Source: Epithemia pelagica
Taxonomy: Eukaryota; Protista; Bacillariophyta
Assembly (NCBI GenBank): GCA_946965045.2
Contig: OX337241.1
Coordinates: forward strand, 2,356,001-2,420,000
DNA: 64,000 bases
Direction of reading: 5' to 3'
Shown: piece by piece, positions 13,417-37,707 of the stretch
Numbering within the stretch: position 1 is the first letter of the stretch
How the letters are laid out: each line of letters begins with the position of its first letter
Notes under the pieces: generated by a model
The model's input: the letters and a program-made list of their open reading frames with translations, nothing else
Databases searched by the model: none
Told to the model about the DNA's origin: nothing
Translations under genes and position numbers: made by a program

Positions 13417-13430
13417 CGCTTCCTCTGCGC
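13417..13430 (+). promoter_or_regulatory. Putative non-canonical primer-binding site complementary to the initiator tRNA-Met D-arm
   Basis: The reverse complement GCGCAGAGGAAGCG(TG) matches the conserved eukaryotic tRNA-iMet segment GCGCAGYGGAAGCG. No TGG-type PBS follows the LTR. Confidence 0.65.
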
Positions 13431-13467
13431 TGTTTACAGCTAAAACGTTGTCAATTCATCATCCACC

Positions 13468-16784: not shown

Positions 16785-16884
16785 CATCTAAGGAAGGAAC
16801 GGTACGCCAGTTTATGGCGGTTTAATTATCGATAAGAAAGCACCCCTAAGCGCATCCTACTAGAATCATCCGCGCGCAGGACAC

Positions 16885-17112
16885 GCGCACACCTACAAGA
16901 ACATGCGCACACCTACAAGAACATGCGCACACCTACAAGAACATGCGCATGGCCCTTCCTCACGTTATTACTAAAAATGTGCTTTCCAGAACCAGCAAGC
17001 GCATGACCCACATTTCACCAACTTCAACACCATGCACAGTCAAGAACCAATAGTCATCACATCCCTCCACCTTCATGCACAGTCAAGAACCAACAGTCAT
17101 CACATACCCTCC
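16885..17112. repeat. Left subterminal repeats: 20-bp unit x3 and ~42-bp unit x2
   Basis: gcgcacacctacaagaacat x3 at 16885-16944; catgcacagtcaagaacca...ctcc x2 at ~17030-17112. Confidence 0.85.
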
Positions 17113-17312
17113 TATGTATGCACTCATCCTTGATTGTGTCACATCACCATCATGCGCATTACTCCAGCATCAAGTGCAAGCAAGTTGAACACAGTGCATT
17201 TAACTAACACCATGCACACACTCCCACTAACAACCAGCGAATGAATGGAACACAATACATGTAGCTATATAGGAGTAGTATATGAAATGAAACCAATTGT
17301 CACTCTGATCAA

Positions 17313-19305: not shown

Positions 19306-19869
19306 CGTTTATCTTGGATGCTCCGTCTGATTTATGACAAGGATGTGAACAAGAGCAGGGTGACAACAAGACCTCTGATGGACAACCATTCAAATTCAAA
19401 CGCTGGAATGCTCCATGTTTGAATCATAAACTCCGTGTTTGAACGATGGTCCTTTAGAGAACGTATGAAGATGAGCATAGGTGGTTTCAAGTACATCATA
19501 CTTGTCAGATGGAACATTGGTGCATGGGTTTGAATGATTGTCATTTCCTTTCTAATGTCGACAGTGTCGGTATCCTCGGCATTGACACAGTGTTTGAATT
19601 CCAATCGCTGCTATCACCGTTGGTATCTAACCCGGCAGGCTGGATTGGATTAAGTAAATACACACGACCGTTTGAAAATATTATGATCCGTTCATGTACA
19701 TAAGCGATTTTCAGTCGCTTTTATGCACCAACGTCGGCCGATCCACCCAATGCGGAGAAATTCTGATATATGCCACAAGATTGACCACCGATGTCTCAAT
19801 TTGCAGAAATCGATTACAGAGCATTTTTCATTACAAACCAAAATCTAAAACCACCAGCATCGTACCATC

Positions 19870-22800: not shown

Positions 22801-23727
22801 ACCAGAAAAGAACAAGACGGATCAAACCGAAACCAGACGAGTAGTGTACACAGGCGATTGACAGCAGCACCACACGAGGAGGATGTGGTATCAGTGAATA
22901 TCGAATTCCATTCCAAAACAAATCATGACATGACATTGCCACAGTTTTGTAATCACTTCTTTCGATTACATTACAAACGCTTTTTTCATCATATAGACGG
23001 GATGAGTGATGATCCAACAAATGAGACTTCAACCACACTGGAATTGTTTGGGAGCACAGAACTTAAGTTCGAAGACCCCAGGATAGGAAATATACGGGCT
23101 CATCCGAATTATCAAAGCGAGGGGCCATGGAGAGATAGGGTGATGGCTAAAGTTCCAAAGAAAAAAAGGAAACCTCTTGATGAGGTATACAACCAGCCTC
23201 TCGGAGAATTTGATACCATCCTATGTCAAACGATATGCTTCATTCAAATACCCATTACTCGAACAGACCACATACAAATGCAACCATCACCGGTATGTCA
23301 ACCTTCAACTTCACCCGAGATGACCCATGTCCTTCTCCGAACAACATATGTACGGAGTACAGCTGATATCGAGAAATCATCCGTTCTCTTTCAAAAATGG
23401 CGTAAGCGTTTTGACCTACATCGAATAGCTGAAATTGTCATGGTTCCACTCCGGAATATTGTTGAGGTTGTTGGTGTAGTGGATGAGAACCCAGAAATAA
23501 TTCAAGACCGTGATTCTATCCCAACATATTTCCATTCTTCACTTGAAAAAGATTTACTCCAAGAAGACAGTCGTAATTTGAGAAACTTTAGTGACAATGT
23601 CTGGGCCGTACGCAACATCAAAGAATGGGCTTCCGAATTCAATGAAAGTGCCCGTGACAATCTCGAGAAACGCTGTAATGAAATGAAAGAAAGATTGAAA
23701 CAATCCGTTAGCAATTCGACGTCATGA
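19870..23727 (+). CDS. Plavaka/CMC-type DDE transposase, 1285 aa
   Basis: N-terminal CxxC..HxxxC finger; YMDKTH (D1), GDGKSQD (D2), CDVLH (CxxH), IPKFHNLIH, ESEESNH (E) and RAHPNY...PWRD. Confidence 0.8.
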   Translation: MGQRRKVKKKSRKRCSNTSQQEESFISFQVCRFCQSRFDARGISRHETVCELKMNTQRKWPNVGDDNNDCASNMNADPMNIDIMDDETTIPHADPPKAYYVPGDTDNIILRNSKECPVDFPAFLDRDGKQLKLHKHDAALVSLMMLLRKAGCPKYLYNSILAWSSDTYSRCGPGFFLDNHSKRKTFIEKFSSKGFNYPKAKFFPVPMEFTQKQGVVVPESEKSITTPVFDLISQLQRVLQDPDATKKENTILDDDDPYRPYVPNKHIQNIQDGEVFRKTVEKYRDDPDAFVVGLVCYMDKTHATGDGRYTSEPVVMVPSFLTETQMRKARRQIILGTITDMERKSSAAKHILDKGTPCRNYHAQLTKILEGLVSIQKQEGLWMKLRLHGIIKVVRLILPMIVVKGDGKSQDNLAGRYASHHPSVGRLSWCCNIKPRDSRYPWHECSYINAASTYKMCLNALGLNENREKLTEQDVDYQERDNDTFSTLTVPTCLSTSQVSQENSRDGGVNTLVSAAKTQLHDMGQYAVDLCFSKVYLGEGTNSEHGIFSASSCDVLHTLKSGIMRYIMIDFFTLMTKTERAMFDYVYNSIFRASRQTVFSYSSKLGYPGTSFSTGISNLSKVTANEWVGIMFASAALCATARGRLIFAKNMAKKWNKVVAEWKKRQAKQTSKTTNKTCQADLDQVQETSEPIADNEDDTPPDEEYERTRLDDDDSVDIDITAETVFDDDPVAYRSIWDVDEREPYIDFLHLFETLLCFNSWIRMDTFWETDPDSQEGQTTASKSLESVRILMDGIRRYAPRLDKKGKLMSNGWMIPKFHNLIHIIQQIQNFGPARLLDVESEESNHKEIVKLNAKTVQKRGKGIFESQLAENIWWMQSLEMLQEATGLEEDHVTFLQEGKSPYEIRRKKGSQNQLPTTSTSNSRGTVIVVSMTREKCLIPVPHTNVHTSGDNQDQSSDEIDKDLPSPLGMSIQVPGTTRKEQDGSNRNQTSSVHRRLTAAPHEEDVVSVNIEFHSKTNHDMTLPQFCNHFFRLHYKRFFHHIDGMSDDPTNETSTTLELFGSTELKFEDPRIGNIRAHPNYQSEGPWRDRVMAKVPKKKRKPLDEVYNQPLGEFDTILCQTICFIQIPITRTDHIQMQPSPVCQPSTSPEMTHVLLRTTYVRSTADIEKSSVLFQKWRKRFDLHRIAEIVMVPLRNIVEVVGVVDENPEIIQDRDSIPTYFHSSLEKDLLQEDSRNLRNFSDNVWAVRNIKEWASEFNESARDNLEKRCNEMKERLKQSVSNSTS

Positions 23728-23922
23728 TCATAATTTGCCTCTATGGGGGGTTGTCACATACCAGCACTCCCCTCCTAATCTCCCCCCCAAACGTACGCGA
23801 GCCGACCAATTCAACTCAGAGTGTCACACACAAATTGGATGAAATAGTAGATACTTTCCATCGTTTTCCAAAAGTCATCCTCAGTCTTCAGTCAGCAAGG
23901 CTATTCTACTCCTCTTCAAACA

Positions 23923-25050
23923 ATGATCAACCCATACAAATCGAGGAAGAAAACAGTTCCACCCTTGGTGGTCAAACCAAACTTTCCAGTCACAAAGATA
24001 CCTCCATCTAATGAAGAAATGATGATCAACCCATACGAGTTAGAGGAAATAGAGACCCCCATGGTCAAAACGCACTCTCCAACCCCGAAAACTTGCGACG
24101 GTGAACATGACAAGAAGCCACCGCCTGCGTCCAAATCAATAATCAAATGTCATCCACTTCCGTCTTCTAAGCTTGATACCAAGGAAGAAGAGGAGAAGAA
24201 ACTTCCACCAATCAAGCGCCCATCGTATCAGTTGATCCCAAACCCATATAAGAAGAAGCTCAAGGTTGCCGATCCATCTACTATTCCAATCTTGCTATTA
24301 CATGACTCTCCTCCAATGTGTAAACCAAGAGCAAACCGAGATAAGCTGCATCTCGAAGTTATTCGGTTCACTGAGCTTGTCAATAAAATCTATGGATCCA
24401 ATGATGTTCCCCCAGAGCCAGTCTGTCCTTGGTGTTTTGTAACCGACAACCTTTCAACAGATCGTAGACTTACAGGAAAATGTTGGCATCACTTCGGTAA
24501 ATCTCTCTCATGTGCCGATTGTTGTTATGGTTGTGGAGTGCCCATGAACGGATGTGATTCAGGTGGGAATGAACGTTGTTGCACCGAAGCCCTGTATATC
24601 CATGATTCGATGAATATCACACGCGAAGAATCAGACATAAACAAGGTTCCATTGGTGTGTAAGTCTTGCTTAAGGCCATGCAATTCTTATTCAGAATGCG
24701 TCTTCTCGCATGGTTGTTGGAACTCTTGCAACAAGTACTTCGTCTGGCGATTCTGTCATATTGCTGGACGGGCGTTGGTGTACTCACAATTGAAGCCCAA
24801 TTGCAAAGGACCAGGCACGATTCCCAAACATGCACAGGATATTATCAAAAACGCAACAGAGTTGATGTACAACGAACTGCGAGATCCGATGGAGTCTTCT
24901 CAGTACACATCTCCATTTTGTCATGTTCTTGACCAAGACTCCTGGTCTAAATGGCTTGTCTCCATGTCTTTCGGTCGATACTACAATTACATGCCGTTCT
25001 TCCGTCATTGTTACACAGCCTTGATGTCTTCATCGAAACCATTGTATTAA
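23923..25050 (+). CDS. Cys-rich transposon cargo protein B, 375 aa
   Basis: Intact ORF with NPY repeats, many CxxC pairs, NKYFVWRFC and WSKWL...NYMPFF. Confidence 0.65.
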   Translation: MINPYKSRKKTVPPLVVKPNFPVTKIPPSNEEMMINPYELEEIETPMVKTHSPTPKTCDGEHDKKPPPASKSIIKCHPLPSSKLDTKEEEEKKLPPIKRPSYQLIPNPYKKKLKVADPSTIPILLLHDSPPMCKPRANRDKLHLEVIRFTELVNKIYGSNDVPPEPVCPWCFVTDNLSTDRRLTGKCWHHFGKSLSCADCCYGCGVPMNGCDSGGNERCCTEALYIHDSMNITREESDINKVPLVCKSCLRPCNSYSECVFSHGCWNSCNKYFVWRFCHIAGRALVYSQLKPNCKGPGTIPKHAQDIIKNATELMYNELRDPMESSQYTSPFCHVLDQDSWSKWLVSMSFGRYYNYMPFFRHCYTALMSSSKPLY

Positions 25051-25111
25051 ACAAACTCTCGACTTCTTCGAAAGGCAAACTGGGAACAGATAACAAGATT
25101 TATAATATATG

Positions 25112-26068
25112 TCAATGATCATTACCATCCATATTTCCACGTTCCAACTCCGCCGTCTCAGCCATTCTTTCGAGACAATTACGGAAGCACCTGACAAAGA
25201 GTGGCATGTAGTTGCGAAAACCAGCCGTAGAATGAGGCAACGAAAGCAACCATACTGCCCATGTTTTATCAGATGCTCGGGCATAATCGTATGGGGCACA
25301 ATCGTTATCATCAAAATAGAAACGGGATCGCAATTCCTCACGCCAAACGCTGCGGACAATAGTAAACATTGGCCAGGTGATTTGACGGGGAAAGTTCACA
25401 CCATCGTAGAAAGATGTTATTTGAAAAGTACGCGCCACAATATGGCGTATGAGCATACAGAACTGCCACACGAAGTGCTTGTTCTCAGATTCCACACAGA
25501 CACTGCATGAATCCAAATCTGGTTGTGGAATCCCAAAAGGTATTGAGCGTTCGGGAATTCGGAAACATTCCCTACACACCTGACAATGAAATGTTGGATG
25601 CCTGTGGCGGTGACATAAGTTACAACGCATCAAAAAATTCTGCTGCCAGATAACTGAATAATCGAGATATGCCGCACGTGTTACCACTGTAGTATTTCCA
25701 TGATTGCACTGGTGATGTGGTGTGGGACGACCAAGGATAACACAGTATGGACAGAGTTTCTCACCTCTAAGCATTTCGTCCACCAACCGTTTGAATTCAG
25801 TCTGGATTTCATGACCGACACGCATCTCTTCTCTGAGTTGTTCTATGACTTGTGGTACATCTTCTTCTTCATTATCGTAATCAAAAAAGATCCTCCCAGC
25901 GTCCCTGAAACAAGGCCGATCATTCACTTCCAAGTTCCTGTCGTTGATCGCCCGCATTTCTCGTCGTCGTCTACGTTCCCGAACATAAAAATCTTCTTCC
26001 TCCGATTCTTCTTCCTCCGATTCATCTCCCGATTCATCCTCCGGTTGGTCCTCTGGATTGTCAGCCAT
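25112..26068 (-). CDS. Cys-rich transposon cargo protein B', paralog of 23923-25050
   Basis: First ATG at 26068. Acidic N-terminus, CxxC pairs, NKHFVWQFC and WAVWL...NYMPLF. Confidence 0.65.
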   Translation of the reverse strand: MADNPEDQPEDESGDESEEEESEEEDFYVRERRRRREMRAINDRNLEVNDRPCFRDAGRIFFDYDNEEEDVPQVIEQLREEMRVGHEIQTEFKRLVDEMLRGEKLCPYCVILGRPTPHHQCNHGNTTVVTRAAYLDYSVIWQQNFLMRCNLCHRHRHPTFHCQVCRECFRIPERSIPFGIPQPDLDSCSVCVESENKHFVWQFCMLIRHIVARTFQITSFYDGVNFPRQITWPMFTIVRSVWREELRSRFYFDDNDCAPYDYARASDKTWAVWLLSLPHSTAGFRNYMPLFVRCFRNCLERMAETAELERGNMDGNDH

Positions 26069-26660
26069 TCTGTTTGCAGTCTCCTTCTCTTCGTTTTGCT
26101 GTGAATGCAAATACCTGTACTTGTTGCTTCTTCTTTGGATTTTTATGAAACCTCCGCTGTCATATGAACGAGAGTTCAACTGGAAATAGATCCACGGATA
26201 ACCGATCGGTCGCGTTTGTGTACAGAAATCGTCACACTATACTATTCACTGTGAGTATTACCACATACTGTGAGGATAAGTGTAATCATTCCCAACATGG
26301 TCGCGTTTCACTCGCTGGGCTGACCTATCGGTGTGGCTTTGCAAAATTCCATGGACATGGAACAATGACATGCTTCTAGAACTCGAATGGCTCCAAATTT
26401 TCGTATAGACCATTTGGGTATCATTTGCATGGACGGTAAAGGCTCTGAATTTGTCTATCATCAACCAAAAGACTTGCAATAGACCCTACCGGTGTGGTGT
26501 TGCCGTCGTCCCAAAATTCTATGGACATGGAGCAAAGACATTCTTCTAGAAATCGAATGGCTCCAAATTTTCTAGAGACCCTTGGGGTATCATAGGCATT
26601 GATTGATGGTAGGTAGTGGTTTTGCTGATAGGTGGGCATGGTCTTGTATATTAGAAATCT

Positions 26661-29600
26661 CTATTCGTCACTAGATTTCTGGCCCGACGCCAAGCCTCCA
26701 ATTTCATGAGAATTGTCATCCTCGTTTTGTGTTACGGTAGCACTCAAAGATCTTGCATTTGTGCTAAAAAACCAACCAATCGTATGATTTCCCACATTCT
26801 TGTCTTTCGGTGGTATGGAGTGTGTATGGACAGATGTTCCATGTCTGATGATTCTCCCGTCCCATGCGATCGCAATGCCATGGAATAACCGGATACAAAG
26901 CCCATGATAAGTCTTGTCCTTATGCTTTATAAGGACATTGGGAAGGACGAAATACCAATTGTTGGTGCTGCCTGGGTTGGTTTCTGTCCAGATTGTAAAG
27001 GACACTGATGCATCATGAATATCATAGTGGCTTGCATTCATCAAATCGCAACTCGAAATGATGGATGATGACACACCCCTTTCGTTTCCTCCCAATTCGT
27101 TTGGGACATCCAAACCGAAGTTTGTTTCCAGGTGTCTGAAAGCCGATAACACACCAGGGAATTTCCTCTCACAGAATCGCCGAACACCTCCACAGATTTT
27201 TGGCAATATATTCATCATGTTTGGAGATATTTTGAAAAGTTTGTCAGAAAAGAATGTACTTCTGCCACCCGTTTTTGTGCACACACCAACAGATGTCATA
27301 GTCCCCATATCACCATGGTTACACCTTGCATTGGCTGATCTCTCTAGTGTACCGCTCTGCGCGAAGTGACATGACCTCTTGTGTAACAATGAAAGTAGGT
27401 TTTTGTCATTTTGCTGAAGTGTTGTCACTTTGACATGGCTGATGGTTTCGTTTTTACCCGCGTACCCACGTGTCCGAACAATGAATGTTGTATCTTCTCC
27501 GGTATCCCTTACATCAAACAGGAGCGGACGGACCGAAGTATCAGGCGGAGGGGACAGGTTTCTATACAATGCTCCATGGACGTACTTTCGGCATCCAGTC
27601 TTGTTAGCACTGGCTTTATTCAGCAGTGTTTCACGATACCACACTCTAAGAGAATGTTGGTCATTTGGTGTCATTTTTGGTCTGGACTTTTCACTTGTGT
27701 AATGATCAGGGGCCCAAAGTGGAGAACCACTTTCAACATCAGACGCTTGGTAGCATTCATGGACAACTCTCTTTGCACTTTGTGTCCAATCAATACACCA
27801 ACACTTGACAACCTTTTTGAGGAATGCCCCACCACTTGGTTGGCCGTCGGAATGTCGTAAGCGCAGCCAGGATATAGGTAGTGCTACCAAAGATGAAGTG
27901 CATTCCGATGTTGCATACCCAGTATTCATTATCATTGCCGAAGTATAAAAAATACCGGCCAAAGGGATGATAACGATCACGTCATGGAAAATATGGTCCA
28001 TACAATCATCACAGTTTTTCTTGGATGTGCGACAATGGAAGATTGTATCGTCAAACGCAGACCACACGGTTTTGGGGTATTTCCGATGTCCCTTATGTCG
28101 TTGACAGCGATTCAGTACACATTCTACCAAGAAGGCACATGGAGACCGGGTTGTTAAGAACTTCGGGTCACATTCTGTCACATGAAGCTTGTTGTCTTCG
28201 AAACAACAATGGCTTGCTGGATCTTCCGTCACCTCACCAACCATGTCTTTCATTTGTTCGTATATGTTAGGTAATTTTCCCATGATTGTTTGGAGGTCTG
28301 TTGGTGTGATGTCGTAGTCTTTCAGAACCTTTGTATAGCAGATGCCGAACATTCTCCGATCATCATTGCTACTGAGACAGAGTGATAGTAAGTCGCGTAG
28401 TCTTTTTGCTACCTTGTCCATGTCAGGAATTCCAAAAAAACACATTTCTGTATGATCGGATTCATTTGGTTTGGAGAATTTTGTCGTCAAATGGCTAGGT
28501 TTCTCAGCCTGTCGTCTCTTATACTTCTTCATCGTTTCATGTGTTAGTGTCAACTTCGATAGGCCCTCTTGTCGTCGTTGCTTGTTCGTGGGTAGTCCCC
28601 TGGATGAACCAATGGTCTTACATTCTTTTCTTTTCCTTTCCGGTGAAGTATTCTGTTCGTCAGTATCGTCATGATTACCGTGTATTGGAGACTTGTGAAT
28701 CTCCTTCGTACCTCGTTCGTCTTGTATGCGCTGATCCGTTTGTGTTGTCGTGTTGATGCTACTTCCCTTGTTATGGTCGTTTTTTGTCATTTGGTCATCG
28801 TTGTTCTTGTTGCTACCTTTTTGTTTGTCTGTACTATCCTTTCCTTCTTTGGTTTGTGTCGCATCATCTTGGTTGACACTGTCATTGTGACAGCTAGACG
28901 GATTATCACTGTCAGGTGTGTTGTTGGCATTCTTAGACCCGTTCTCTCCAGAATTTCCGTGTTGTTCGTAAGCAACAATCTCTTGCTTGCCACATTCCTT
29001 GCCCTTTTGTTTGTCTGTAGAACCGTTGCCATCTCTGCTTTGTATCTCTTCTCCTTGTCCACATTCATCTTGGTGACTGGAGGTTGCTTTCTGACCGCTC
29101 TGTCTGTTCCGATCATCCCTCTCCTGATTGTCCTTGGAATTCCAACCAAGTTTGGATAGGCCATCCTGCCCTCCACGACTCGCTGTAGTGTGATGAATGT
29201 CCTTTTCTCTCTCTCTACGAGGTGATTGATTTGGTTGACTATTACCTCTATCAGTTGAGGGACGGTTAGGCTCTCTCTGACGGGTACGCCTAGAATGATC
29301 GTTGTGTCCAGGATGACTGTCTCTAAGTGACAAATGGTGCCTGGAATGTTCGTTGTATCCAGGGAATCTCTCCCAATCCATCGGATCCATCGGATGTCGA
29401 TTAGACCATTGATTGTGGCTATCTCTATATACCGAATGGTGCCTTGTATGTTCTCTCGAATGTTCGTTGTATCCAGAGAATCTCCTCCAATCCATCGAAT
29501 GTCGATTAGACAATTGATTTTGATTATCATGTCTTCTTTTTCTATCCCGGTAAGTGTTTTCCATGATTTGATCTCTTCTCCCTCTAGACTCGTCTTGGTG

Positions 29601-32600
29601 GTTATCATGGTATCCATGTTGGTCTTGTTGCTCAATGACTCCTCTTCTAGTTTGTTGGTTATCTTGATCGAAATGTGAATGACGAGACCCATGATAATCC
29701 GATGTATTAGATCCTCTCGATCCTGGATGATCATCATTGAATCGATTCTGTCCATGCTTACAATACACTGGCCTGTCATGTTCAGGTAGCGAACCCCACT
29801 CATTTGTTCTGGGGCTTCGAGTTGTCGACAGGACGTTGTTCTGATTCCGTCCACCCCACAGCCCATATGGATTCTCTCTCTTGTCCTTGGTTCTTTCGTT
29901 ATCATGTTGGGTTTGCTCTGTTCTATGTCTTTCTTCAGGCAGCTCACTCCGGTTACCCCAATTTGCAGGCATTGCAACGGAACGTGATGAGTTATTTCCT
30001 CCCCATTGCTGGTATTTAGGCTTCTCACCCTCTGGTGACTGATAGATTGCTTTGTGTTCAGAAGGATGAGTATATGTTCTTTGAACAGAACGTGTCATAG
30101 GACAGAAGTACAATAGACTTTGAATATCCTGGCTGCACACCATACATGTGTTGTGGCCCCGCTGCATCCAATCTCCAACACATTCCCGACAAAATGTATG
30201 TCTACAAAGAAACAGTTCGCAATCCACTTTTCTGGTCATACAAATCGAACAAACCTCGGGCTTGTATTTTGTCTCAACTCCTCTTTGTTCTAGTGTTGAT
30301 GGCTTGTTACTCACGGGTGATTTTTTTGATGATTCTTCAGGGCGTCCCTCAATCGTAGTTGTAGTGTCTTTGACTGTTTTCCTATGTCCCTCTTCAGGGA
30401 ATCCCTCGCTCGTAGTTGTAGTGTCTTCCGCTGTTTTCTTGTGTCCCTCTATCTTCTCCGCACCAAACATGTGGATGTTACTCTTGATCTTTTGTCCACA
30501 CTGGGGACACCATACATTATGATACTTGAACCGTATTCGTAAGCAATTTCCGTGAACCAGATGTCCACATGGGATGAGGGTACAGACTTCGCTGTCTGTA
30601 TCTGTTTTCAATGCCCTGTTACAGCATACACAAGAATCTGGACAATATACAACGGTCGGTAGCAATCGATTTATATCTCTCTTGGAAAGTTTGGAGTCAA
30701 GTAACACCTCCTTGGGTTCTAATCCCACCCTCGGGCACGGTATGAACAATATGTCACCATCCGTAGTCCACGTCTCTGAACACCCACCATCAGATAGATC
30801 GACGTTCTCCTGGTATTCGTATTTATCGGTACCACGTGAAAACCCCACTTCAACAGGATCGTCGTCGCTGTTGCCATCGAAATTGTCAGGTCCCAACACC
30901 AAAGGAGAAATCGAATTGCCTTCAACAGCATGCTCTAGTCCTCTCGAAAATTCATTATTGTACCGTATTTGATTACTCGAAAAACAATTGGATATCGTCA
31001 TACTCTTGTCTATCTGACCTTCTTTCCGACCCGGGTTTGGTCGACTACTCATTATGTTTCCAAGCATTCTGATCACAATAGCTTGTGGCATTGGCTTTGG
31101 AGTATCCTTCTTAGGTTCTGGCATTTTCACAATGCGATATCGCCACTTGTTACATTCCTTGTTTGTATCATGTGTTGTTTCATCTTCTTCCACTAATGAT
31201 GGGTCATAACATAGACTGACAGGCGGGGCACCTTTTGACGTATTGACCAGGTCCCATTTCCGTAGTACATGACGCGTCGTTCCTTCCCAGTATTGGTCTG
31301 ATCGATTATGTATTGGTTCGTAGATATGAAGTATCTTTTTGTCGATTTCGAAAGCCAATAAAGCTGGGTCGCTGACATCAGTTGCTGTTGTCAAGGCAAT
31401 GATCGCCAATATCAGTGTGTTCGGATCCTGTTGTCTCCATGATGACATAGGAATTTTCTTAGGAAATGGGTTCCTGTTTGCTTCATCAAATGTTACTTTG
31501 TCAACATATACTAGGTTCTGATGGTTGTGATGGACCATCAATTTCAAACAAGTATAGAAAGACTCAATCGGCATGCCCGTCCTTGAAGTGTTGTAGCAAA
31601 GATCTCTCCGACGATGTCTATGTGGGATATGCAAAACACGCGTTGTAGGGTCCTGGTCATTCATCAACCCACTGTAAGACATGCATAGTGTGCACCTAAA
31701 TAATGTCTTGATTTCGACATGCGTGTTGTCCTTCCCCATACTCTTAGCATACTGGGTTGCTAGCTTCATGGCCGACTTGATGTTCTCGTTGTTTCTGTTA
31801 GTTTGTTTTTCCGCGAACTTGTCCAAGTAACCGTCACCAATGTTGTCGATTGATTCATTCGAGTCCCATGAGTCTTTTCTTCTCTTCTGGTTTACTATAG
31901 GATCAAGAACGTGTGGAATTTCAATGAAAGGCTGTGGTACCACACCATCACCTGTCTCCTCAATTCCCTTGTTTATGGAAGCACAACGTCTCTAAGACAA
32001 ATAGATCAATCATTTTTGAGATTGTCTAATCCTTCTCGATTCTTGGCAAGTCGCTCGAACATCTTACCTCGTTGTCTGCGGTTTTTTCATTGTCGTCGCT
32101 TATAATCTTCCTGACCTCTTCCACACGGTCTGATTTGAGGGCAACTTGGTTCGACGTTGTAATGGAAGTTGGTAGTACTTGATCCTTTTTCTCGTCAGTA
32201 GGATCATTACCAGCGACGACCTTCTGTCTCTTTTTTGCCGGCGAGTCTATACTCCGACGTTGCACGGCAATTTCTTTCGATTTCCTGGCAGACAGTACCT
32301 CTTGTTTTTCTATATAATGCAGTAGATCGTAGAACATACCGCCATCGTCTCCGTTTCTTCCATATTGTACCAAAGAATCTCTTTCTTCAAGGTACATCTT
32401 GAACCATGTGTCAGGCATCGTATACAACAGTGCTTTCTCCATTTGGATATTGGAAATCACGTCCATGTTCTCGTCCGATGTCGATTCTGAGATGAAACGG
32501 TGTATGGCCACCATATGTTCGATAACCCATGCGATTTTACCAACAGGTACGAGACGCGGTTTCCTGTAAAGGGAGGAATCATCTAGAAGGTATCGTTTCA

Positions 32601-33192
32601 ATGCTTCTCCAATCCCACCGATCCCCTTGCGTGTCTTCTTAGAGACTAAGCCATGAGAGGAAAGAAATCTGATAATGGTTTGTCTCAGATTCTCAGCACC
32701 GTCTATCACTGTCGTCCCAAATGCCTGATTCCAAATATTGGAAACAGGACTGTAGAGAGTCTTTTTGAACAACAGTCGAGCAACCATTGGAGTCAACTTG
32801 TCATCATCATCCATCTCGTTCTTAATTCTTGTGAAACAGAAAACGGAGTGACAGATGATATCTTGGAATGCAGGCGAATAACAGATTGGTAGGAATATCT
32901 TCACATAATGGCCGTCATGTGGTACCTCCACTGTTGTCCATTTTCCTGATTTGTCTTGGAAAACACTTTCATACCAATTGAGGACACTTTCGTATGTAAT
33001 GGGCATAATACCGGTGTAGTGAGATTCCTCGCTTGTGTGTGTTCGAAGTGTATGATTGGTACCAGAAACAGTCATAGTCGACACGTCCTTTCTTTTGTTT
33101 CGCACTTCATCATTCATTGAAGAAGGGTCACCAGGATTCTTGGCGGTCGGTGGTTTTTTGTAGCGAGGGCCCTTGATGCGGTTGCCCGCCAT
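26661..33192 (-). CDS. ~2151-aa protein with two RING fingers and a C-terminal TET/JBP-like 2OG-Fe(II) dioxygenase domain (2 exons)
   Basis: Exons 33192-32068 and 31991-26661, joined by a phase-0 GTAAG...TTAG intron. RINGs: CVCC...CGHLVHGNC...CPQC and CSIC...CRHTFCREC...CMVC. Dioxygenase: ASHYDIHD...WYFVLPN...LFHGIAIAWDGRIIRHGTS. Confidence 0.7.
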
Positions 33193-33214
33193 TTTGTACT
33201 TGTCACGATGCGCT

Positions 33215-34560
33215 TTTTGTGTAGCGTCTTTGTTTCAACAACAACAACAACAAGGGTAGTCGAGGAAGCGCTTTAATTGTAGCGTCTTTGAGACAACCTT
33301 GTGTACTTGTCTAATCAGTAAAAAGTGTGCGCTGAATTGTGTAGCGTCTTTGGTTTGGTCCTGAACTCTGGTGGTAACAAAACAACAACAAAATCGAAGG
33401 AATACACTACGACGCGCTTTATGTGTAGCGTCTTGTTCGTTGTGATCCAACAATCGGTGCCAGAATTTGCTACTCCAAAACCAGGGGTTGGTTGGTTGTC
33501 CAAGCAATCTCGCGACAAGAATAGAACAGAAGCAACTGGCTACCACCGTGTCACACTGCTTGCTTTGGGTCTGTTCTATTCAAGTCCGAGTATCACGAGG
33601 ACAGGAGGGTTCTTGATAAACAATCTAACAGATAACCCGAAACCGCTTCAATTGTAATAGCGTGATTGGAGTGAAGGACAGAGCTGAGTGAAACAAGCAA
33701 CAATCAGACAGATGCCCCAAGCCGCTTTAATTGTAGCGTGGTGATTGGAATGGCAGAGCTGCAAGATAGTGCAAGTGTCAAAGATAGGACAAATGTCGAC
33801 AATATTTCGAATGCTCTGGTGGTCGTTCTTCTTCTTGGGTTCCTCTTCTTCTTGTTTTCCTGTTGTAGCGGTTTTGGAGTGAAGGTCGTGGTTGAAAGGA
33901 AGCAAGCAACAATCAGACAGATGCCCCAAGCCGCTTTAGTTGTAGCGTGATTGGAATGGCAGAGCTGCAAGATAGTGCAAGTGTCAATGTCTCGAATGCT
34001 CTGGCCGTGCTTGAGTTCCTCTTCCTCTTCTTCTGGTGCAGCGGTTTTGGAGTGAAGTGTTGTAGCGGTTTTGGAGTGAAGGTCGTGGTTGAAAGGAAGC
34101 AAGCAACAATCAGACAGATGCCCCAAGCCGCTTTAATTGTAGCGTGATTGGAATGGCAGAGCTGCAAGATAGTGCAAGTGTCAATGTCTCGAATGCTCTG
34201 GCCGTGCTTGAGTTCCTCTTCCTCTTCTTCTGGTGCAGCGGTTTTGGAGTGAAGGTGGCTGAAGAGGAAGCAAGCAACAAAAAGGTGGCTGAAAAGGAAC
34301 CAAGCAACAATCAGACAGATGCCCCAAGCCGCTTTAATTGTAGCGTGATTGGAATGGCAGAGCTGTTAGGTTGATGAAAGAAGTTGGATAGGTGAAAGGA
34401 TTGAAAAGGGAATCTCGGCAGAGAGAAAGCAAGCAACAAAAAGGTGGCTGAAAAGGAACCAAGAAACAATCAGACAGATGCCCCAAGCCGCTTTAATTGT
34501 AGCGTGATTGGAATGGCAGAGCTGTTAGGTTGATGAAAGAAGCTGGATAGATAATGGGAT
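33215..34560. repeat. Right subterminal tandem array built on TGTAGCG motifs and a ~55-bp core
   Basis: caatcagacagatgccccaagccgcttta(a/g)ttgtagcgtg...gattggaatggcagagctg occurs about five times; tgtagcg occurs more than ten times. Confidence 0.85.
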
Positions 34561-35246
34561 TGAACAGGGGAATCTCGATAGCGTTGGGTGATCGATTGTT
34601 GTTGTTGCTGCTGCTGTTGTTGTTGTTTGTTGTGGTGTGTTGGGTGGAGGTGGAGGGAGATGAATGAGCATCGATTCTGGTGGTCGTTGATTGTTGAATG
34701 ACTAGTATGCTAAGTTGTTCGGTTTTGTTCGATGGATCAGAGTGTCGAGTTGGTAATCCCCGCGGTTTGGGTGATTGGGAAGGAGGATCCATCTGAGACA
34801 TTCTTTGGGACATCCATGTGCGTCAGTCTTTCTGGCAGCTGCTGTGTGATGTGGTGGGAGTGGAAATTCGTGATTCAAAGGTGAGGGGACAGACGCTTGC
34901 GCATGAGGGTTGCGTCATGCGCGTCTCGGGGGGGTCGAGCGCGCCAGATAGTTGTAGTGCGCATTATCGGAGTGTGGCGCGCGTTATTCGTGGTTTGATC
35001 GCGGGCTTGTGCGCATTAAAATTGTGGCATGCGCGTGATAGTCAGCTCGATCTCTAGAACTAGCTAGAGAAATGTGCATTGTTAGACCTAGATTTGCAGA
35101 TTTAGTTGGGAAAGCAGGATTATAGTTAAAAACTGCGCATATAAAAATAAACTGCGCATAAAAAATTTTAATTCGGCGAATTTTTTCTAGAAATTCGCTT
35201 TTGGGGGTGGAAATCAAGCGCCGGGGCCCATTTCCCTCCTTAGATG

Positions 35247-37219
35247 GAGAGGCCCAACCAATATCTCAATGGCAGTATAAGGCAGGGTTCACAAAATCCA
35301 GACCACGCATGAGGGAGAATCAACCACGCGTGGAATTCAGAAGTACAACGACGTCATCCCGACGTGAGACCGACGTTACGATACCCGAAGACAGGGACCA
35401 AACTAACGATGCTAACCCGCCAATGAAAGAACGAGAAACTATGCCAGAGCATGAGGGAGCTAGGCGGTCCCAACGTACTCCTCGTCGAACACAACGATAT
35501 CAAGACTACTTGACTTCGCTCCAAGAGCCCGAAGACGCGATCGGAGAAGTAGCTATCACAGCTAAACCAACTGTGACAGTCAATACCGCTCAAGCTAACA
35601 GCAATCCAGATGTTATGTACTGGCATGAAGCGATGAAACAAGAGGATCGAGCGGAATTCATAAAGGCAGCACAGAAAGAAGTACAAGATCATAGCGATAA
35701 TGGGCTATGGGAGGTGGTCAAGCGAAAGGACATTCCGAAAGGAGCGCTAATCTCCCGAGGAGTGTGGAGTTGCGTCCGAAAGAGAAGACTAAAAACTAGA
35801 GAAGTCTACAAATGGAAATCCAGATTGGCATATGATGGGTCCATGCAAGAAAAGGGGGTTAACTATTGGGAAACCTACGCTCCCGTGATTCAATGGCCCG
35901 TCGTGAGATTCATCCTGACTATGGCACTCACACAAGGATGGCACATCAAACAGGTAGATTATGTGCTGGCATATACTCAAGCAGTCGCCGAGACTGATAT
36001 GTATATGGAAGCGCCGAAAAGCTTCACATTCGATACAAAAGGAAACCAGCGAGCAGAAGACTACGTCCTCAAGATCAAGCAAAATTACTATGGGCAGAAG
36101 CACGGTGCCCGAGTCTGGAATCAACACCTCGTGGAACGACTTAAGCAAGTCGGTTTCCAACAAAGTGCACACGACGAGTGCCTCTTTTATCATGGTAAAT
36201 GCGTATACATTTTGTATACGGACGATTCATTATTGTTGGGTCCTGACAAAGAAGAACTCGACCGGTTGATTGTTACAATGGAGAATAGTGGTCTGAAGAT
36301 GACCTATGAAGACGGAGTCAACGATTTTCTTGGGGTCAACATCGACAGAAAAGAGGATGGCACCATCCACTTGACTCAACCACATTTAATTGACTCAATC
36401 CTCCAAGATCTTCACCTTGCCGACGAATCGACCAAGAAGAAAGAAACACCGGCACCAACCACAGTACGCTTGAGACAAGACCAAGACGGAAAAGCATTTG
36501 ATCACCATTTCCATTACAGGTCGGCGATCGGGAAACTCAACTTCCTGGAAAAGAGCACGAGACCAGATATTAGTTTCGCCGTCCACCAATGCGCTAGATT
36601 TTGCGAAAACCCAAAAGCAATTCATGGGAAAGCCGTCAAACACATAGCACGTTACCTCGCCGGGACAAGAAAGCAAGGAGTGATACTAAAACCCGACACC
36701 ACGAAATCTTTCCAAGTGTTCGCTGACGCGGACTTTGCTGGCAATTTTAACAAGCTCGACCACCCAAACAAGGACATGGCTCGGTCTCGAACGGGATTTG
36801 TGGTCTTCTATGCAGGTTGCCCCATCCTCTGGCAATCAAAACTGCAGTCAGAGATAGCCTTATCAACCACAGAAGCAGAGATCATCAGTTTGTCACACGC
36901 ACTACGTACCGTCATTCCGTTGATGGCCATCACTCGTGAGATGAAGGATTTGGGAATCCCTATTCTCTCTACGACACCCAATATACACTGCAAGGCCTTC
37001 GAAGATAACAGTGGTGCAGTCGAACTTGCAACGATATACAAGTACAGACCCAGGACACGGTATCTGTGCACCAAGTTGTTCCATTTTAAATCTTTTGTGG
37101 AACGAAAAGAGATCGAGATTCACCCGTGCGCGACAGACGATCAGACCGCGGATATCTTCACTAAATCGCTCAACGAATCATCGTTCGAGAAACATCGCGA
37201 GAGTATACAAGGATGGTAA
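35247..37219 (+). pseudogene. pol: Copia Pol 3' part (reverse transcriptase, RNase H)
   Basis: KSRLAYDG, QVDYVLAY, YGQKHG and LYTDDS (RT); FADADFAG, LSTTEAE, EDNSGA and ADIFTK (RNase H). Confidence 0.92.
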
Positions 37220-37237
37220 CATCGACTCTACTCGGCC

Positions 37238-37246
37238 GAGAGGGAG
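37238..37246 (+). promoter_or_regulatory. Polypurine tract
   Basis: gagagggag abuts the 3' LTR. Confidence 0.8.
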
Positions 37247-37707
37247 TGTTCAAAATAATGAGATATGGTCAGTGAATGAAGAAGTGCGACCAATATTCGG
37301 AACCGGCATTCGGAAGTAGAAGATTCGACCGACAAGAGACGAGTACCATCGTTATTTCAAACAGAACAAATGAACCAATGGGCCGACCAAGTCTCATTTG
37401 GAGCAGCGCGTCATCAACAATAACGGCCCAAACAAGTCCAATACATAGAGAAACGAGATCCTATGGCATCCCATAACTGTCGTCGTCTAAACATTCTGAC
37501 AGGCAAGAACGGGCTGGACGACGATACATAGGAAACCAAGATTGCAACAAGATCGCAAAAGATCTCCAATCTACCTTATCAAACGGCCGACGATCCAACG
37601 GATCACAGCCATCGCTACGAGTAGAAGTAAAGACTAAACACACAACTTAACTTTGTTTTACACGGGTTGAGCTCGTTCTTGTTGCCTACGGTAGCAGGAA
37701 AACAACA
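37247..37707 (+). repeat. 3' LTR, 461 bp
   Basis: Direct repeat of 12956-13416. Confidence 0.95.

What the first reader, a model, noticed from the sequence alone, without database searches (positions are those of the whole stretch)
26661..33192. Transposon-borne double-RING plus TET/JBP-like dioxygenase: candidate self-encoded anti-silencing system
Seen: a phase-0 intron (31992-32067) fuses the 388- and 1760-aa ORFs into ~2151 aa. The protein has two RING fingers (~30135-30635) and a C-terminal HxD (HYD, 27029-27021) ... distal H (HGT, 26843-26835) double-stranded-beta-helix signature. The usual 2OG-binding Arg after the distal His is not evident (GNHTIGWFF). Established: TET/JBP enzymes oxidise 5mC or T, are linked to KDZ and Plavaka transposons in fungi, and the Chlamydomonas homolog CMD1 uses ascorbate instead of 2OG; diatoms methylate transposons. 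Inference: the element may erase or re-mark its own methylation and ubiquitinate chromatin factors, possibly creating an unusual base.
Basis: partly seen in the sequence, partly recalled or inferred. Interest (0 to 1): 0.88.

Follow-up and report, generated by a model that had tools for sequence, protein, structure and literature searches.

The report
Plavaka transposon's RING–TET fusion gene
An 18.5-kb jumping gene of the Plavaka type, apparently in a diatom, carries one large gene that joins two RING fingers to an enzyme folded like the TET/JBP DNA-base oxidases. The enzyme may let the element tamper with its own DNA methylation, but no activity has been shown.

Summary
The sequence features hold. 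Two ORFs on the minus strand (388 and 1760 aa) can be joined by a canonical 76-nt GT-AG phase-0 intron into a 2151-aa protein. No RNA evidence could be obtained.

The protein has two RING fingers. Its last ~500 aa fold with high confidence (pLDDT 89.6) into a TET/JBP dioxygenase: VIA-align gives TET2 Z 19, CMD1/NgTET1/CcTet Z 15-16, and AlkB/FTO no more than 12.

The HxD...H iron triad, an HxDxxD aspartate and an upstream Arg are nearly invariant in about 70 relatives. The second 2OG-anchoring Arg of TET2/NgTET1 is absent across the family. A Trp sits at His+13, as in CMD1.

The gene lies in an 18,462-bp Plavaka-type DNA transposon (16785-35246). It has CATCTAAGGA inverted ends, a 2-bp target duplication and an intact DDE transposase, and it is inserted in a Copia element. 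Dozens of copies 98-99% identical exist in the same assembly.

A diverged sister family keeps the whole RING-TET architecture. TET-domain changes between copies are mostly synonymous.

Anti-silencing, ubiquitination and an unusual base remain inference.

The scan found this family before on other DNA (s1-226332, s1-242206) and on this same stretch (s1-230515). It is a new variant of a known kind: TET-carrying Plavaka elements are described in fungi.

The parts
16785..35246 (.). Complete Plavaka-type DNA transposon, 18,462 bp, lower in GC than its flanks
   Evidence: Similarity to four other copies in the same assembly starts exactly at 16785 (L006) and stops exactly at 35246 (L003, L004, L005), at 97.9-99.3% identity. 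GC is 0.42-0.46 against about 0.50-0.54 beyond the Copia host.
16785..16800 (+). Left terminal inverted repeat, CATCTAAGGAAGGAAC
   Evidence: It is the reverse complement of the right end (10 of 10, then 15 of 16) and is identical in L006 and L007.
35231..35246 (-). Right terminal inverted repeat, ...TTTCCCTCCTTAGATG
   Evidence: The ends read 5'-CATC..GATG-3', like PlavakaB termini (PMC12730594).
16783..16784 (.). Target-site duplication GA (second copy at 35247-35248)
   Evidence: Removing the element plus one GA restores the Copia pol reading frame (frames taken coordinates; flanks). Copy L007 has TG on both sides.
19870..23727 (+). DDE transposase of the Plavaka lineage, 1285 aa
   Evidence: tblastn gives 25% identity over 573 aa (E 2e-42) to the L002 gene, which hits PF18759 Plavaka at 3.5e-12. 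The alignment keeps D299, D406 and E843 and the K-x-H-x3-H motif. Atlas nearest clusters are Plavaka. Pfam is blank for the window protein itself.
32068..33192 (-). Exon 1 of the large gene (375 codons); no recognised domain
   Evidence: ORF. There are 36 cluster members at 90% identity or more. Identity to L001 is 35%. Pfam and PDB searches were blank.
31992..32067 (-). Predicted 76-nt GT-AG phase-0 intron
   Evidence: There is no RNA support.
26661..31991 (-). Exon 2 of the large gene (1776 codons plus stop)
   Evidence: The long ORF is intact in L004 (1757 aa called), L005 and L006, and broken in L003.
30894..31769 (-). Conserved N-terminal domain of unknown fold (ORF2 aa ~59-350); weak Ulp1/C48-like lead without the catalytic residues
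   Evidence: Identity to L001 is 41-43%. Atlas features point to Peptidase_C48 at 0.89 with 151 shared, which is below the trust level. The AF2 model failed at pLDDT 29.
30498..30632 (-). RING-H2 finger (ORF2 aa 438-482)
   Evidence: The Cys/His pattern is. Pfam zf-RING_2 is sub-threshold here. The L001 homologue (55% identity) scores 30.8 bits against a 27.3 cut-off. Weak PDB matches to AMFR and RCHY1 RINGs.
30117..30257 (-). C3HC4 RING finger (ORF2 aa 563-609)
   Evidence: PF13920 scores 31 bits (cut-off 27) and PF00097 scores 27.1 (cut-off 21). The RNF8 RING matches at E 4.8e-6.
28464..30086 (-). Low-complexity, probably disordered linker (ORF2 aa ~620-1160), with in-frame indels between copies
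   Evidence: Low entropy of 3.3-3.7 bits. There is a 9-nt in-frame deletion in other copies. N:S is about 1.4 here.
26694..28166 (-). TET/JBP-type dioxygenase domain with its N-terminal extension (ORF2 aa ~1260-1750)
   Evidence: AF2 pLDDT 89.6 and pTM 0.92. Foldseek PDB hits are TET2 (1e-10), then CMD1, NgTET1 and CcTet. VIA-align gives Z 19.2 for TET2 and 15-16 for CMD1/NgTET1/CcTet against 12 or less for AlkBH3/FTO. 26 of the top 27 Swiss-Prot models are JBP1/2, TET1-3, NgTet1 or CMD1.
27012..27029 (-). H1639-Y-D1641-I-H-D1644 (HxDxxD): two iron ligands plus the Asp that reads N4 of cytosine in CMD1 and NgTET1
   Evidence: H 70/70, D 69/70, D 69/70. The residue roles of CMD1 D350 and NgTET1 D234 come from PMC7854593.
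26841..26843 (-). Distal iron-binding His1701, in WDGRxIRH(G/C)TS
   Evidence: H 66/67 and T at +2 in 61/67.
27324..27326 (-). Arg1540 (NxRxxxGDxGxM), candidate equivalent of TET2 R1261 / CMD1 R244
   Evidence: R 66/71. It lies 99 residues before the first His, against 101 in CMD1 and 121 in TET2 (numbers from PMC7854593). The equivalence is inferred from spacing and has not been superposed.
33200..34570 (.). Array of ~160-210-bp tandem repeats just upstream of the gene's start codon (probable promoter or binding region)
   Evidence: Repeat families D2, D3, D5, D6, D7 and D11.
23923..26179 (.). Two convergent accessory genes (375 aa +, 355 aa -) that share a C-terminal domain
   Evidence: BLASTP gives 28% identity over 112 aa, E 1e-8. 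Pfam was blank.
17313..19305 (-). Fifth gene: three abutting ORFs of 227, 210 and 229 aa, probably one interrupted gene
   Evidence: Pfam was blank.
12956..37546 (+). Host Copia LTR retrotransposon, split by the insertion
   Evidence: Two identical 300-nt LTRs at 12956-13255 and 37247-37546. The integrase part is at 15357-16835 and RVT_2 at 35201-37219.

Best explanation
Window 16785-35246 is a young, complete, multi-copy cut-and-paste transposon of the Plavaka lineage (CACTA/EnSpm relatives). Besides its DDE transposase it carries a ~6.5-kb gene.

After removal of one 76-nt intron, that gene encodes a 2151-aa protein with this layout:
- two conserved N-terminal regions of unknown fold;
- a RING-H2 finger;
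- a C3HC4 RING finger;
- a ~540-aa disordered linker;
- a C-terminal Fe(II) dioxygenase of the TET/JBP family.

Most likely mechanism (inferred, not shown): the dioxygenase flips out and oxidises, or otherwise modifies, 5-methylcytosine in DNA. The likely target is the element's own CpG-bearing ends and promoter repeats, so that methylation-based silencing is weakened. The RINGs would recruit an E2 and ubiquitinate a nearby chromatin protein or the protein itself.

Shown here: the fold, the iron triad, the transposon context, the copy number, conservation of the architecture, and purifying selection.

Inferred: the substrate, the target, the benefit to the element, and E3 activity.
For: Fold:
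- AF2 pLDDT 89.6.
- TET2, CMD1, NgTET1 and CcTet top Foldseek and VIA-align at Z 15-19, clearly above AlkB/FTO at Z 12 or less.
- 26 of the top 27 Swiss-Prot models are TET/JBP enzymes.

Family:
- The exhaustive search gave 649 representative relatives at E<1e-3.
- H1639, D1641, D1644, H1701 and R1540 are nearly invariant.
- HxDxxD has the same spacing as NgTET1 H229/D231/D234 and CMD1 H345/D347/D350. There the last Asp bonds N4 of 5mC and disfavours thymine (PMC7854593).

Selection and conservation:
- TET-domain differences between copies are mostly synonymous: 11S:5N, 11S:7N, 8S:4N and 20S:13N.
- The diverged family L001 keeps exon 1, the N-terminal domain, both RINGs and TET at 35-59% identity.

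Transposon:
- Exact ends, inverted repeats and a 2-bp target duplication.
- DDE transposase homologous to PF18759-positive genes.
- 53 transposase and 36 exon-1 cluster members at 90% identity or more.
- The same TET family sits next to Plavaka transposases in metagenome contigs L002, L011 and L013.
- 21 of the element's 32 GCGC sites lie in its first and last 500 bp.

Precedent: TET-carrying PlavakaB elements in fungi, with CATCA..TGATG ends and 2-3 bp duplications (PMC12730594).
Against: - There is no RNA evidence for the splice or for expression.
- There are no biochemical or methylome data.
- The window protein and most relatives do not reach any Pfam TET model; only 5 of 73 give weak hits.
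- PDB sequence searches, by single sequence and by profile, were blank.
- The beta-VIII Arg that holds the 2OG C5-carboxylate in TET2 and NgTET1 is absent family-wide, so canonical 2OG-dependent chemistry is not assured.
- CpG observed/expected inside the element (0.5-0.9, except two 1-kb bins near 1.0) is lower than in the flanking Copia (1.15-1.2). If anything, this suggests the element has been methylated and has lost CpGs.
- RING activity is assumed from sequence alone.
Confidence: 0.5

Rival explanations
1. A CMD1-like chemistry. The dioxygenase does not use 2-oxoglutarate in the TET manner. It uses ascorbate or another co-substrate to attach a bulky group to 5mC, or to make another unusual base. 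The mark is masked rather than removed.
For: - No Arg or Lys is conserved in the strand after the distal His. In TET2, NgTET1 and CMD1 the Arg lies six residues before the base-stacking aromatic. Here those positions are G/D, N or H (residue numbers from PMC7854593).
- Trp1652 lies at His+13 (W in 57/69). CMD1 W358 also lies at H345+13, where it fills the Arg's place and clashes with the 2OG C5-carboxylate.
- Ser at His-8 and Thr at distal His+2 match the CMD1 ascorbate contacts T337 and T399 by spacing.
- An invariant Gly1723 sits in beta-VIII (41/41).
Against:
- 2OG-binding residues vary between 2OG-oxygenase subfamilies. Conserved R1697 or R1700 (WDGRxIRH) or R1452 could take over.
- CMD1 His249 has no counterpart; Asp is at Arg+5.
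- TET2 scores higher than CMD1 (Z 19 against 15.7).
Confidence: 0.2
2. The domain is an active dioxygenase whose substrate is not 5mC in the element's DNA. It could be thymine (JBP-like), 6mA (as CcTet can), RNA, or a protein. The benefit to the transposon would then be unrelated to cytosine methylation.
For: - JBP2 and JBP1 models are among the best Swiss-Prot fold matches.
- CcTet 6mA complexes also match.
- NgTET1 also acts on thymine (PMC12344493).
- Sequence identity to all characterised enzymes is only 8-13%.
Against: - The invariant Asp at HxD+3 matches the cytosine-N4 contact of CMD1 and NgTET1. According to the CMD1 study it disfavours thymine and purines.
- All characterised members of this fold group act on nucleic-acid bases.
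Confidence: 0.13
3. There is no fusion. The 388-aa ORF and a ~1702-aa protein starting at Met59 of the long ORF are separate products, and the GT-AG pair is not used.
For: - Automatic gene calls on other copies give separate 388-aa and 1700-1757-aa products.
- There is no RNA evidence.
- In sister family L001 the two parts are in the same frame, separated by one stop, with no equivalent frame-shifting intron.
Against: - The donor GTAAGA and the pyrimidine-rich acceptor are canonical and are kept in five copies.
- The splice gives one clean 2151-codon frame.
- The 58 codons upstream of Met59 are open, and similarity to L001 starts at residue 2.
- The exon-1 homologue directly precedes the long ORF in L001 as well.
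- The gene calls quoted were made without introns.
Confidence: 0.15
4. The RING-TET gene is a passively captured host gene with no role for the element, on its way to decay.
For: - Some copies are broken: L003 has two frameshifts and stops, and L006 has a 1-nt deletion in exon 1.
- Transposons of this superfamily often pick up host fragments.
Against: - Synonymous changes exceed non-synonymous ones in the TET domain.
- The full architecture is retained in a family only 35-59% identical.
- The TET family recurs as cargo beside Plavaka and other mobile-element genes.
- There are hundreds of relatives with invariant catalytic residues.
Confidence: 0.04

Closest known systems
TET/JBP-carrying PlavakaB DNA transposons of Agaricales fungi (Kojima 2025, PMC12730594; association first noted by Iyer et al. 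2014)
   Same: - Plavaka-lineage DDE transposase.
- 5'-CATC..GATG-3'-type ends.
- 2-bp target duplication.
- A TET/JBP dioxygenase gene carried inside the element.
- Proposed escape from methylation silencing.
   Different: - The host is apparently a diatom, not a fungus.
- The element is 18.5 kb with five genes.
- The dioxygenase is the C-terminus of a 2151-aa protein with two RINGs and further domains, not a stand-alone ~300-400-aa protein.
- The termini read CATCTA rather than CATCA.
- The window transposase does not reach the Pfam Plavaka model, and its C-x2-C motif is degenerate (SWCC).
CMD1 of Chlamydomonas reinhardtii (5mC-modifying enzyme using vitamin C; PDB 7CY4-7CY8)
   Same: - TET/JBP fold (Z 15-16).
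- HxDxxD motif.
- Trp at His+13.
- Thr at distal His+2.
- Upstream Arg about 100 residues before the HxD.
   Different: - 12-13% identity.
- CMD1 has no RINGs, and no transposon context is known to me.
- The co-substrate here is unknown.
Human TET2, Naegleria NgTET1 and Coprinopsis CcTet catalytic domains
   Same: Best structural matches (TET2 Z 19.2 over ~296 residues, including part of its N-terminal extension). The iron triad and the Asn/Asp at HxD+3 are shared.
   Different: - The Arg that anchors the 2OG C5-carboxylate (R1896 in TET2, R289 in NgTET1) is missing.
- No Cys-rich zinc cluster is conserved across the family.
- 8-12% identity.
Transposon-encoded anti-silencing factors: maize En/Spm TnpA and Arabidopsis VANDAL VANC (from my own knowledge; VANDAL is also cited in bioRxiv 10.1101/2025.02.11.637652)
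   Same: A DNA transposon (En/Spm is of the same wider CACTA group) encodes a protein that lowers methylation of its own sequence.
   Different: Those proteins are not dioxygenases, and their mechanism is indirect. Here an enzyme able to modify the base itself is encoded.
Giant red-algal Plavaka elements with accessory genes PAG1-3 (Bostrychia preprint, 10.1101/2025.02.11.637652)
   Same: - Plavaka elements of 17-19 kb with several accessory genes.
- One accessory gene has a putative 2OG-oxygenase domain next to tandem repeats.
- The authors propose that the element modifies itself.
   Different: - PAG3's oxygenase was matched only weakly to a non-TET oxygenase (2OPW, E 0.016) and is joined to a ParB-like domain.
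- There are no RINGs.
- No 6mA-methylase/SET gene is present here.

Membership tests
TET/JBP dioxygenases (2OGFeDO) | Double-stranded beta-helix fold closest to solved TET/JBP members rather than to other 2OG oxygenases | tested here: met
   VIA-align gives Z 19.2 (TET2) and 15-16 (CMD1, NgTET1, CcTet) against 12 or less for AlkBH3, FTO and others. Foldseek E is 1e-10 to 1e-6. 26 of the top 27 Swiss-Prot models are TET/JBP enzymes.
TET/JBP dioxygenases (2OGFeDO) | HxD...H iron-binding triad | tested here: met
   H1639, D1641 and H1701 are present and found in 70/70, 69/70 and 66/67 relatives.
TET/JBP dioxygenases (2OGFeDO) | First 2OG/base-stacking Arg (TET2 R1261, NgTET1 R224, CMD1 R244) | tested here: inconclusive
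   R1540 is conserved 66/71 and lies at a CMD1-like distance from the HxD. No residue-level superposition was possible.
TET/JBP dioxygenases (2OGFeDO) | Second Arg in the strand after the distal His, holding the 2OG C5-carboxylate (TET2 R1896, NgTET1 R289) | tested here: not met
   The strand reads N-H-T-[IFY]-G-[WF]-F-[FW]. No Arg or Lys is conserved at any position six residues before its aromatics in 41 relatives; 3 of 41 have R at one of those positions.
TET/JBP dioxygenases (2OGFeDO) | Match to the curated sequence models PF12851 Tet_JBP or PF20515 2OG-FeII_Oxy_6 | tested here: not met
   The window protein gives no hit. Among 73 relatives, 4 hit PF20515 (best E 2e-4) and 1 hits PF12851 (E 0.003).
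TET/JBP dioxygenases (2OGFeDO) | Oxidation of a methylated base in nucleic acid | not testable with these tools
   This needs an enzyme assay or a methylome.
RING-type E3 ligases | Cross-brace C3HC4 / C3H2C3 zinc-binding pattern recognised by curated models | tested here: met
   RING2 scores 31 bits on PF13920 (cut-off 27) and matches RNF8 at E 5e-6. RING1 has the full RING-H2 pattern, and its L001 homologue passes zf-RING_2.
RING-type E3 ligases | E2 binding and ubiquitin (or SUMO) transfer | not testable with these tools
   This needs an in-vitro ubiquitination assay.
Plavaka (PlavakaB) DNA transposons, CMCT group | DDE transposase homologous to Plavaka transposases, with H(3-4)H before the catalytic E | tested here: met
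   E 2e-42 to the L002 gene (PF18759 at 3.5e-12) and homology to L013 (PF18759 at 1e-7). D299, D406 and E843 and K817-x-H819-x3-H823 are invariant. The window protein itself is below Pfam detection.
Plavaka (PlavakaB) DNA transposons, CMCT group | [quoted passage not shown] | tested here: inconclusive
   L002 has CRGC and L013 has CRIC. The window has SWCC at the aligned place, so only the last Cys is shared.
Plavaka (PlavakaB) DNA transposons, CMCT group | Termini 5'-CATCA..TGATG-3' and 2-3-bp target-site duplications | tested here: met
   The ends are CATCTAAGGA...TCCTTAGATG. The target duplications are 2 bp, GA in the window and TG in L007. Criteria are from PMC12730594. The fifth base differs (T, not A).
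Ulp1/SENP (peptidase C48) domain, considered for the N-terminal region | C48 fold with a His-Asp-Cys triad | tested here: inconclusive
   The only evidence is an Atlas feature lead at 0.89. Pfam and PDB were blank. AF2 failed at pLDDT 29. By eye, the expected His, Asp and Cys positions are not occupied.

The most novel reading that the evidence does not exclude
The family is a new branch of TET/JBP enzymes that has given up the canonical 2-oxoglutarate anchor: no beta-VIII Arg, and a CMD1-like Trp in its place. It would use ascorbate or another co-substrate to convert 5mC in the transposon's own CpG-rich ends into a bulky, so far undescribed base. The two RINGs on the same polypeptide would ubiquitinate a chromatin or methylation-maintenance factor at the same site. 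That would be a one-protein, transposon-encoded counter-silencing machine, spread among diatoms on several transposon superfamilies.
Probability: 0.15. Interest if true: 0.88.

Novelty: new variant of a known kind. Interest (0 to 1): 0.62.

Why it matters
In the papers I could search, TET/JBP genes riding on transposons are described for fungi. I found no paper that holds diatom, TET, JBP and transposon together in a relevant sense. Iyer et al. 2014 itself could not be read.

This case differs in three ways:
- The cargo sits in a complete, young, roughly 50-copy Plavaka element of an apparent diatom.
- It is fused to two RING fingers, which directly links a base-modifying enzyme to a ubiquitin-type ligase.
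- It has a catalytic pocket that departs from the 2OG-binding pattern in the same direction as the ascorbate-using CMD1.

Diatoms methylate their transposons and can be transformed. That would make the question of whether a transposon can enzymatically undo or disguise its own methylation directly testable. It could also yield a new DNA-modifying enzyme for sequencing chemistry.

The scan has already reported this family from other copies, so this window mainly adds residue-level and boundary detail.

Tried and rejected
1. RNA check of the splice. The look-up of sequencing runs returned three runs of kind '?'. Laid on 27250-33249, they proved to be genomic contigs, contiguous over the intron, with no 32067/31992 joint.

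2. Sequence routes to known TETs all came back blank:
- Pfam on the whole ORF and on pieces;
- phmmer against PDB;
- profiles A1 and A3 against PDB.
Only structure gave the link.

3. The search for homologous proteins (word-based) found only self or paralogues for the transposase, the N-terminal domain and the TET domain. I therefore have no source names or taxa for relatives.

4. N-terminal domain. AF2 on a 4-sequence alignment failed (pLDDT 29), so no fold search was run on it. The Ulp1 lead is untested.

5. TET2-like Cys-rich zinc domain. Only one Cys column is conserved in the family, so this was rejected as a family feature.

6. RBR (RING-between-RING) reading. The 80-aa spacer between the RINGs has no Cys/His and holds a 19-aa tandem duplication, so this was rejected.

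7. KDZ transposase. Nothing points to it; Atlas and homology give Plavaka/Transposase_21 only.

It worked with a 12-sequence core alignment.

9. Residue-level superposition on CMD1 or TET2. Model coordinates are not exposed, so equivalences rest on spacing only.

10. Iyer et al. 2014 (PMC3918813) is not held.

Full report
**Observation**

The minus strand carries a 1760-aa ORF (26661-31943) and a 388-aa ORF (32026-33192). They are in different frames.
- Read on the minus strand, exon 1 ends ...GAC AAC GAG, followed by GTAAGA (intron from 32067).
- The sequence TTTGTCTTAG ends at 31992 and is followed by AGA CGT..., which is in the frame of the long ORF.
- Removing these 76 nt gives a 6456-nt CDS of 2151 codons with only the terminal stop.
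- GT and AG are unchanged in four other copies.
- The long ORF has no ATG before codon 59. Even so, similarity to a diverged sister family starts at its second codon. This argues that it is translated from an upstream exon.

I could not verify splicing. The three runs that hold the sequence are genomic assemblies that read straight through the intron.

**RING fingers**

- ORF2 aa 563-609 passes the Pfam C3HC4 models. Its best solved match is the RNF8 RING (E 4.8e-6).
- aa 438-482 has the complete RING-H2 spacing but is sub-threshold here.
- Its homologue in locus L001 (55% identical) passes zf-RING_2.
- The spacer between the RINGs has no Cys/His and contains a 57-nt tandem duplication. These are therefore two separate RINGs, not an RBR module.

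**The C-terminal domain**

Sequence methods see nothing. Pfam and PDB searches, by single sequence and by profile, were blank.

An exhaustive HMMER search of 1.84 billion representatives found 649 relatives at E<1e-3 and 59 at E<1e-30. A 73-sequence alignment (A1) gave an AlphaFold model with mean pLDDT 89.6 and pTM 0.92.

Fold searches gave these results:

| Search | Result |
|---|---|
| Foldseek, PDB | TET2 first (E 1e-10), then CMD1, NgTET1 and CcTet, and only then FTO |
| VIA-align | TET2 Z 19.2 over 296 residues; CMD1, NgTET1 and CcTet Z 15-16; AlkBH3, FTO and the rest Z 12 or less |
| Swiss-Prot models | 26 of the first 27 hits are JBP2, JBP1, TET1-3, NgTet1 or CMD1 |
| Atlas language-model search | Tet_JBP and PF20515 clusters; nearest unnamed cluster has Bacillariophyta members |

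**Active site**

In A1 the following are nearly invariant, in ORF2 numbering:
- R1540, D1545, G1547 and M1549;
- S1631 and N1636;
- H1639, D1641 and D1644;
- E1654, W1663, P1668 and G1689;
- D1695, G1696, R1700 and H1701;
- T1703 and G1723.

H1639-x-D1641 and H1701 form the iron triad.

The CMD1 structure paper (PMC7854593) gives residue roles that can be mapped by spacing:
- **Cytosine contact.** The Asp or Asn three residues after the HxD (CMD1 D350, NgTET1 D234, TET2 N1387) bonds N4 of 5mC and disfavours thymine and purines. Here D1644 is present in 69 of 70.
- **2OG anchors.** TET2 and NgTET1 hold 2OG with two Args, R1261/R224 and R1896/R289.
- **First Arg.** R1540 lies 99 residues before the first His, compared with 101 in CMD1, and is a plausible first Arg.
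- **Second Arg.** In TET2, NgTET1 and CMD1 it sits six residues before the base-stacking aromatic (R1896-Y1902, R289-F295, R410-F416). Here the strand reads N-H-T-[I/F/Y]-G-[W/F]-F-[F/W].
- The positions six residues before its three aromatics hold G/D, N (33/41) and H (21/41; R in 3). The Arg is therefore missing across the family.
- **CMD1-like Trp.** In CMD1, W358 (H345+13) fills the Arg's place and blocks the 2OG C5-carboxylate. Here W1652 sits at H1639+13 and is Trp in 57 of 69.

These equivalences are inferences from spacing. I had no access to model coordinates. Other conserved arginines (R1697, R1700, R1452) might replace the anchor, so the co-substrate is open.

**Transposon context**

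The gene lies in a low-GC block that splits a Copia retrotransposon.
- The Copia has identical 300-nt LTRs at 12956 and 37247.
- Its integrase part is on the left of the block and its RVT_2 on the right.

Other copies from the same ENA assembly (ERZ21939226) fix the ends.
- Similarity begins at 16785 (L006) and ends at 35246 (L003-L005), at 97.9-99.3% identity.
- The ends are inverted repeats: CATCTAAGGAAGGAAC and the complement of CATCTAAGGAGGGAAA.
- The target duplication is 2 bp. It is GA in the window, and removing it restores the Copia pol frame. It is TG in a second complete 18,572-bp copy.

The 1285-aa ORF at 19870-23727 is a Plavaka-lineage transposase.
- It has no Pfam hit of its own.
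- It is homologous (E 2e-42) to a metagenomic gene that hits PF18759 Plavaka at 3.5e-12, and to another that hits it at 1e-7.
- The alignment keeps D299, D406 and E843 and the K-x-H-x3-H motif. The C-x2-C motif is degenerate.

Kojima (2025; PMC12730594) describes PlavakaB elements with CATCA..TGATG ends and 2-3-bp duplications. He states that all TET-carrying Plavaka families belong to PlavakaB. The present element fits that description apart from one base of the terminus.

Clusters at 90% identity or more hold 53 transposase and 36 exon-1 sequences on many contigs. This is a family of dozens of young copies.

**Conservation and selection**

- Locus L001, on another contig of the same assembly, holds a diverged family. 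Its identity to the window protein is 35% in exon 1, 41% in the N-terminal domain, 55% and 40% in the two RINGs, and 59% in TET, all in the same order.
- Between near-identical copies, TET-domain changes are mostly synonymous: 11S:5N, 11S:7N, 8S:4N and 20S:13N. The disordered linker shows N:S of about 1.4.
- L004 and L005 share most of their changes, so these counts are not independent.
- Some copies are broken. L003 has two frameshifts and L006 has a 1-nt deletion in exon 1. The window copy, L004 and L005 are intact.

**Wider distribution**

- In metagenome contigs the same TET family lies next to Plavaka transposases (L002, L011, L013).
- In another group of loci it lies directly downstream of a ~1400-aa DEAD/Helicase_C protein, with an integrase-like ORF nearby (L016, L019, L025).
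- None of these carries the RINGs or the N-terminal domain.
- P0060, a 1739-aa relative, shares only the C-terminal ~550 aa.

The RING-TET fusion seems confined to the two families of this genome.

**Mechanism**

What is shown is a transposon-encoded, selected, catalytically complete-looking TET/JBP domain fused to two RINGs.

The rest is inferred:
- that it acts on 5mC (supported by HxDxxD);
- that its targets are the element's own CpG-bearing ends;
- that this counters silencing.

For the targets, 21 of the element's 32 GCGC sites fall in its first and last 500 bp, including repeated TGCGCA. A ~1.4-kb tandem-repeat array lies just upstream of the gene.

CpG observed/expected is lower inside the element (0.5-0.9, with two 1-kb bins near 1.0) than in the flanking Copia (1.15-1.2). 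This may mean that the element has in fact been methylated. That is consistent with a need for such an enzyme, but not with complete protection.

**Comparison and novelty**

- TET+ Plavaka elements are known in fungi.
- Giant Plavaka elements with other accessory genes are known in red algae.
- I found no paper on diatom transposons carrying TET/JBP genes or on RING-TET fusions.
- Earlier notes of this scan describe the same family on other DNA (s1-226332, s1-242206) and on this stretch (s1-230515). They also describe TET cargo on Mutator and Ginger-like elements of this genome.

This is therefore a new variant of a known kind.
- the exact ends and target duplication of this copy;
- the selection pattern;
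- the sister family;
- the family-wide loss of the second 2OG Arg together with a CMD1-like Trp.

Noticed in passing
window 12956-13255 and 37247-37546: The host Copia element has two 100% identical 300-nt LTRs, so it inserted recently. The Plavaka insertion into its pol gene is younger still, which dates the transposon's activity as very recent.
   Followed up: partly
window 16878-16949 and 34898-35160: GCGC/TGCGCA motifs pile up in the first and last 500 bp of the element (21 of its 32 GCGC sites). They include a 20-nt unit, AGAACATGCGCACACCTACA, repeated about 3.5 times at the left end. These are candidate transposase-binding, methylation-sensitive subterminal repeats.
   Followed up: partly
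window 33200-34570: A tandem array of ~160-210-bp units with a shared 51-nt core lies between the right end and the start codon of the large gene. Red-algal Plavaka elements also have repeat arrays beside their oxygenase gene.
   Followed up: no
window 23923-25050 (+) and 25112-26179 (-): Two convergent accessory genes share a ~110-aa Cys/Trp-rich C-terminal domain (28% identity, E 1e-8). The same domain is 84.5% identical in the otherwise diverged L001 locus. No known family matches.
   Followed up: partly
L001:6050-6420: In the sister family the exon-1-like and exon-2-like parts are in the same frame, separated by a single TAA, instead of the frame-shifting 76-nt intron. This could be a different intron, a pseudogene, or two genes.
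   Followed up: partly
L016, L017, L019, L020, L024, L025, L028, L031, L040 (metagenome contigs): A 320-390-aa stand-alone member of the same TET family lies directly downstream of a 1150-1450-aa ORF. In L016, L019 and L025 that ORF has DEAD/Helicase_C domains. In L019 and L025 a ~1150-1200-aa ORF lies on the other strand, and the L025 one shows a weak Integrase_H2C2 hit. This probably marks another mobile-element type carrying the same cargo.
   Followed up: partly
window 17000-35000: CpG observed/expected is 0.5-0.9 in most 1-kb bins inside the element (two bins near 1.0), against 1.15-1.2 in the flanking Copia sequence. This could be a sign of past CpG methylation and deamination, or just of the element's lower GC.
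   Followed up: no
window 30334-30447: A 57-nt tandem duplication (84% identical) encodes the repeated EGH[KR]KT..DTTTT..EG.PE peptide between the two RINGs.
   Followed up: no
window 30894-31769 (ORF2 aa ~59-350): The conserved N-terminal domain gives a weak language-model lead to Ulp1/SENP (C48) proteases. By eye, the places where His, Asp and Cys would be expected are not occupied. Ulp1-like domains are common transposon cargo in plants (from my own knowledge).
   Followed up: partly
window 29376 (gene position 3798): A 9-nt in-frame deletion relative to the window is present in copies L003-L005 and in all three sequencing runs. The window copy therefore carries a minority length variant in the disordered linker.
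   Followed up: no
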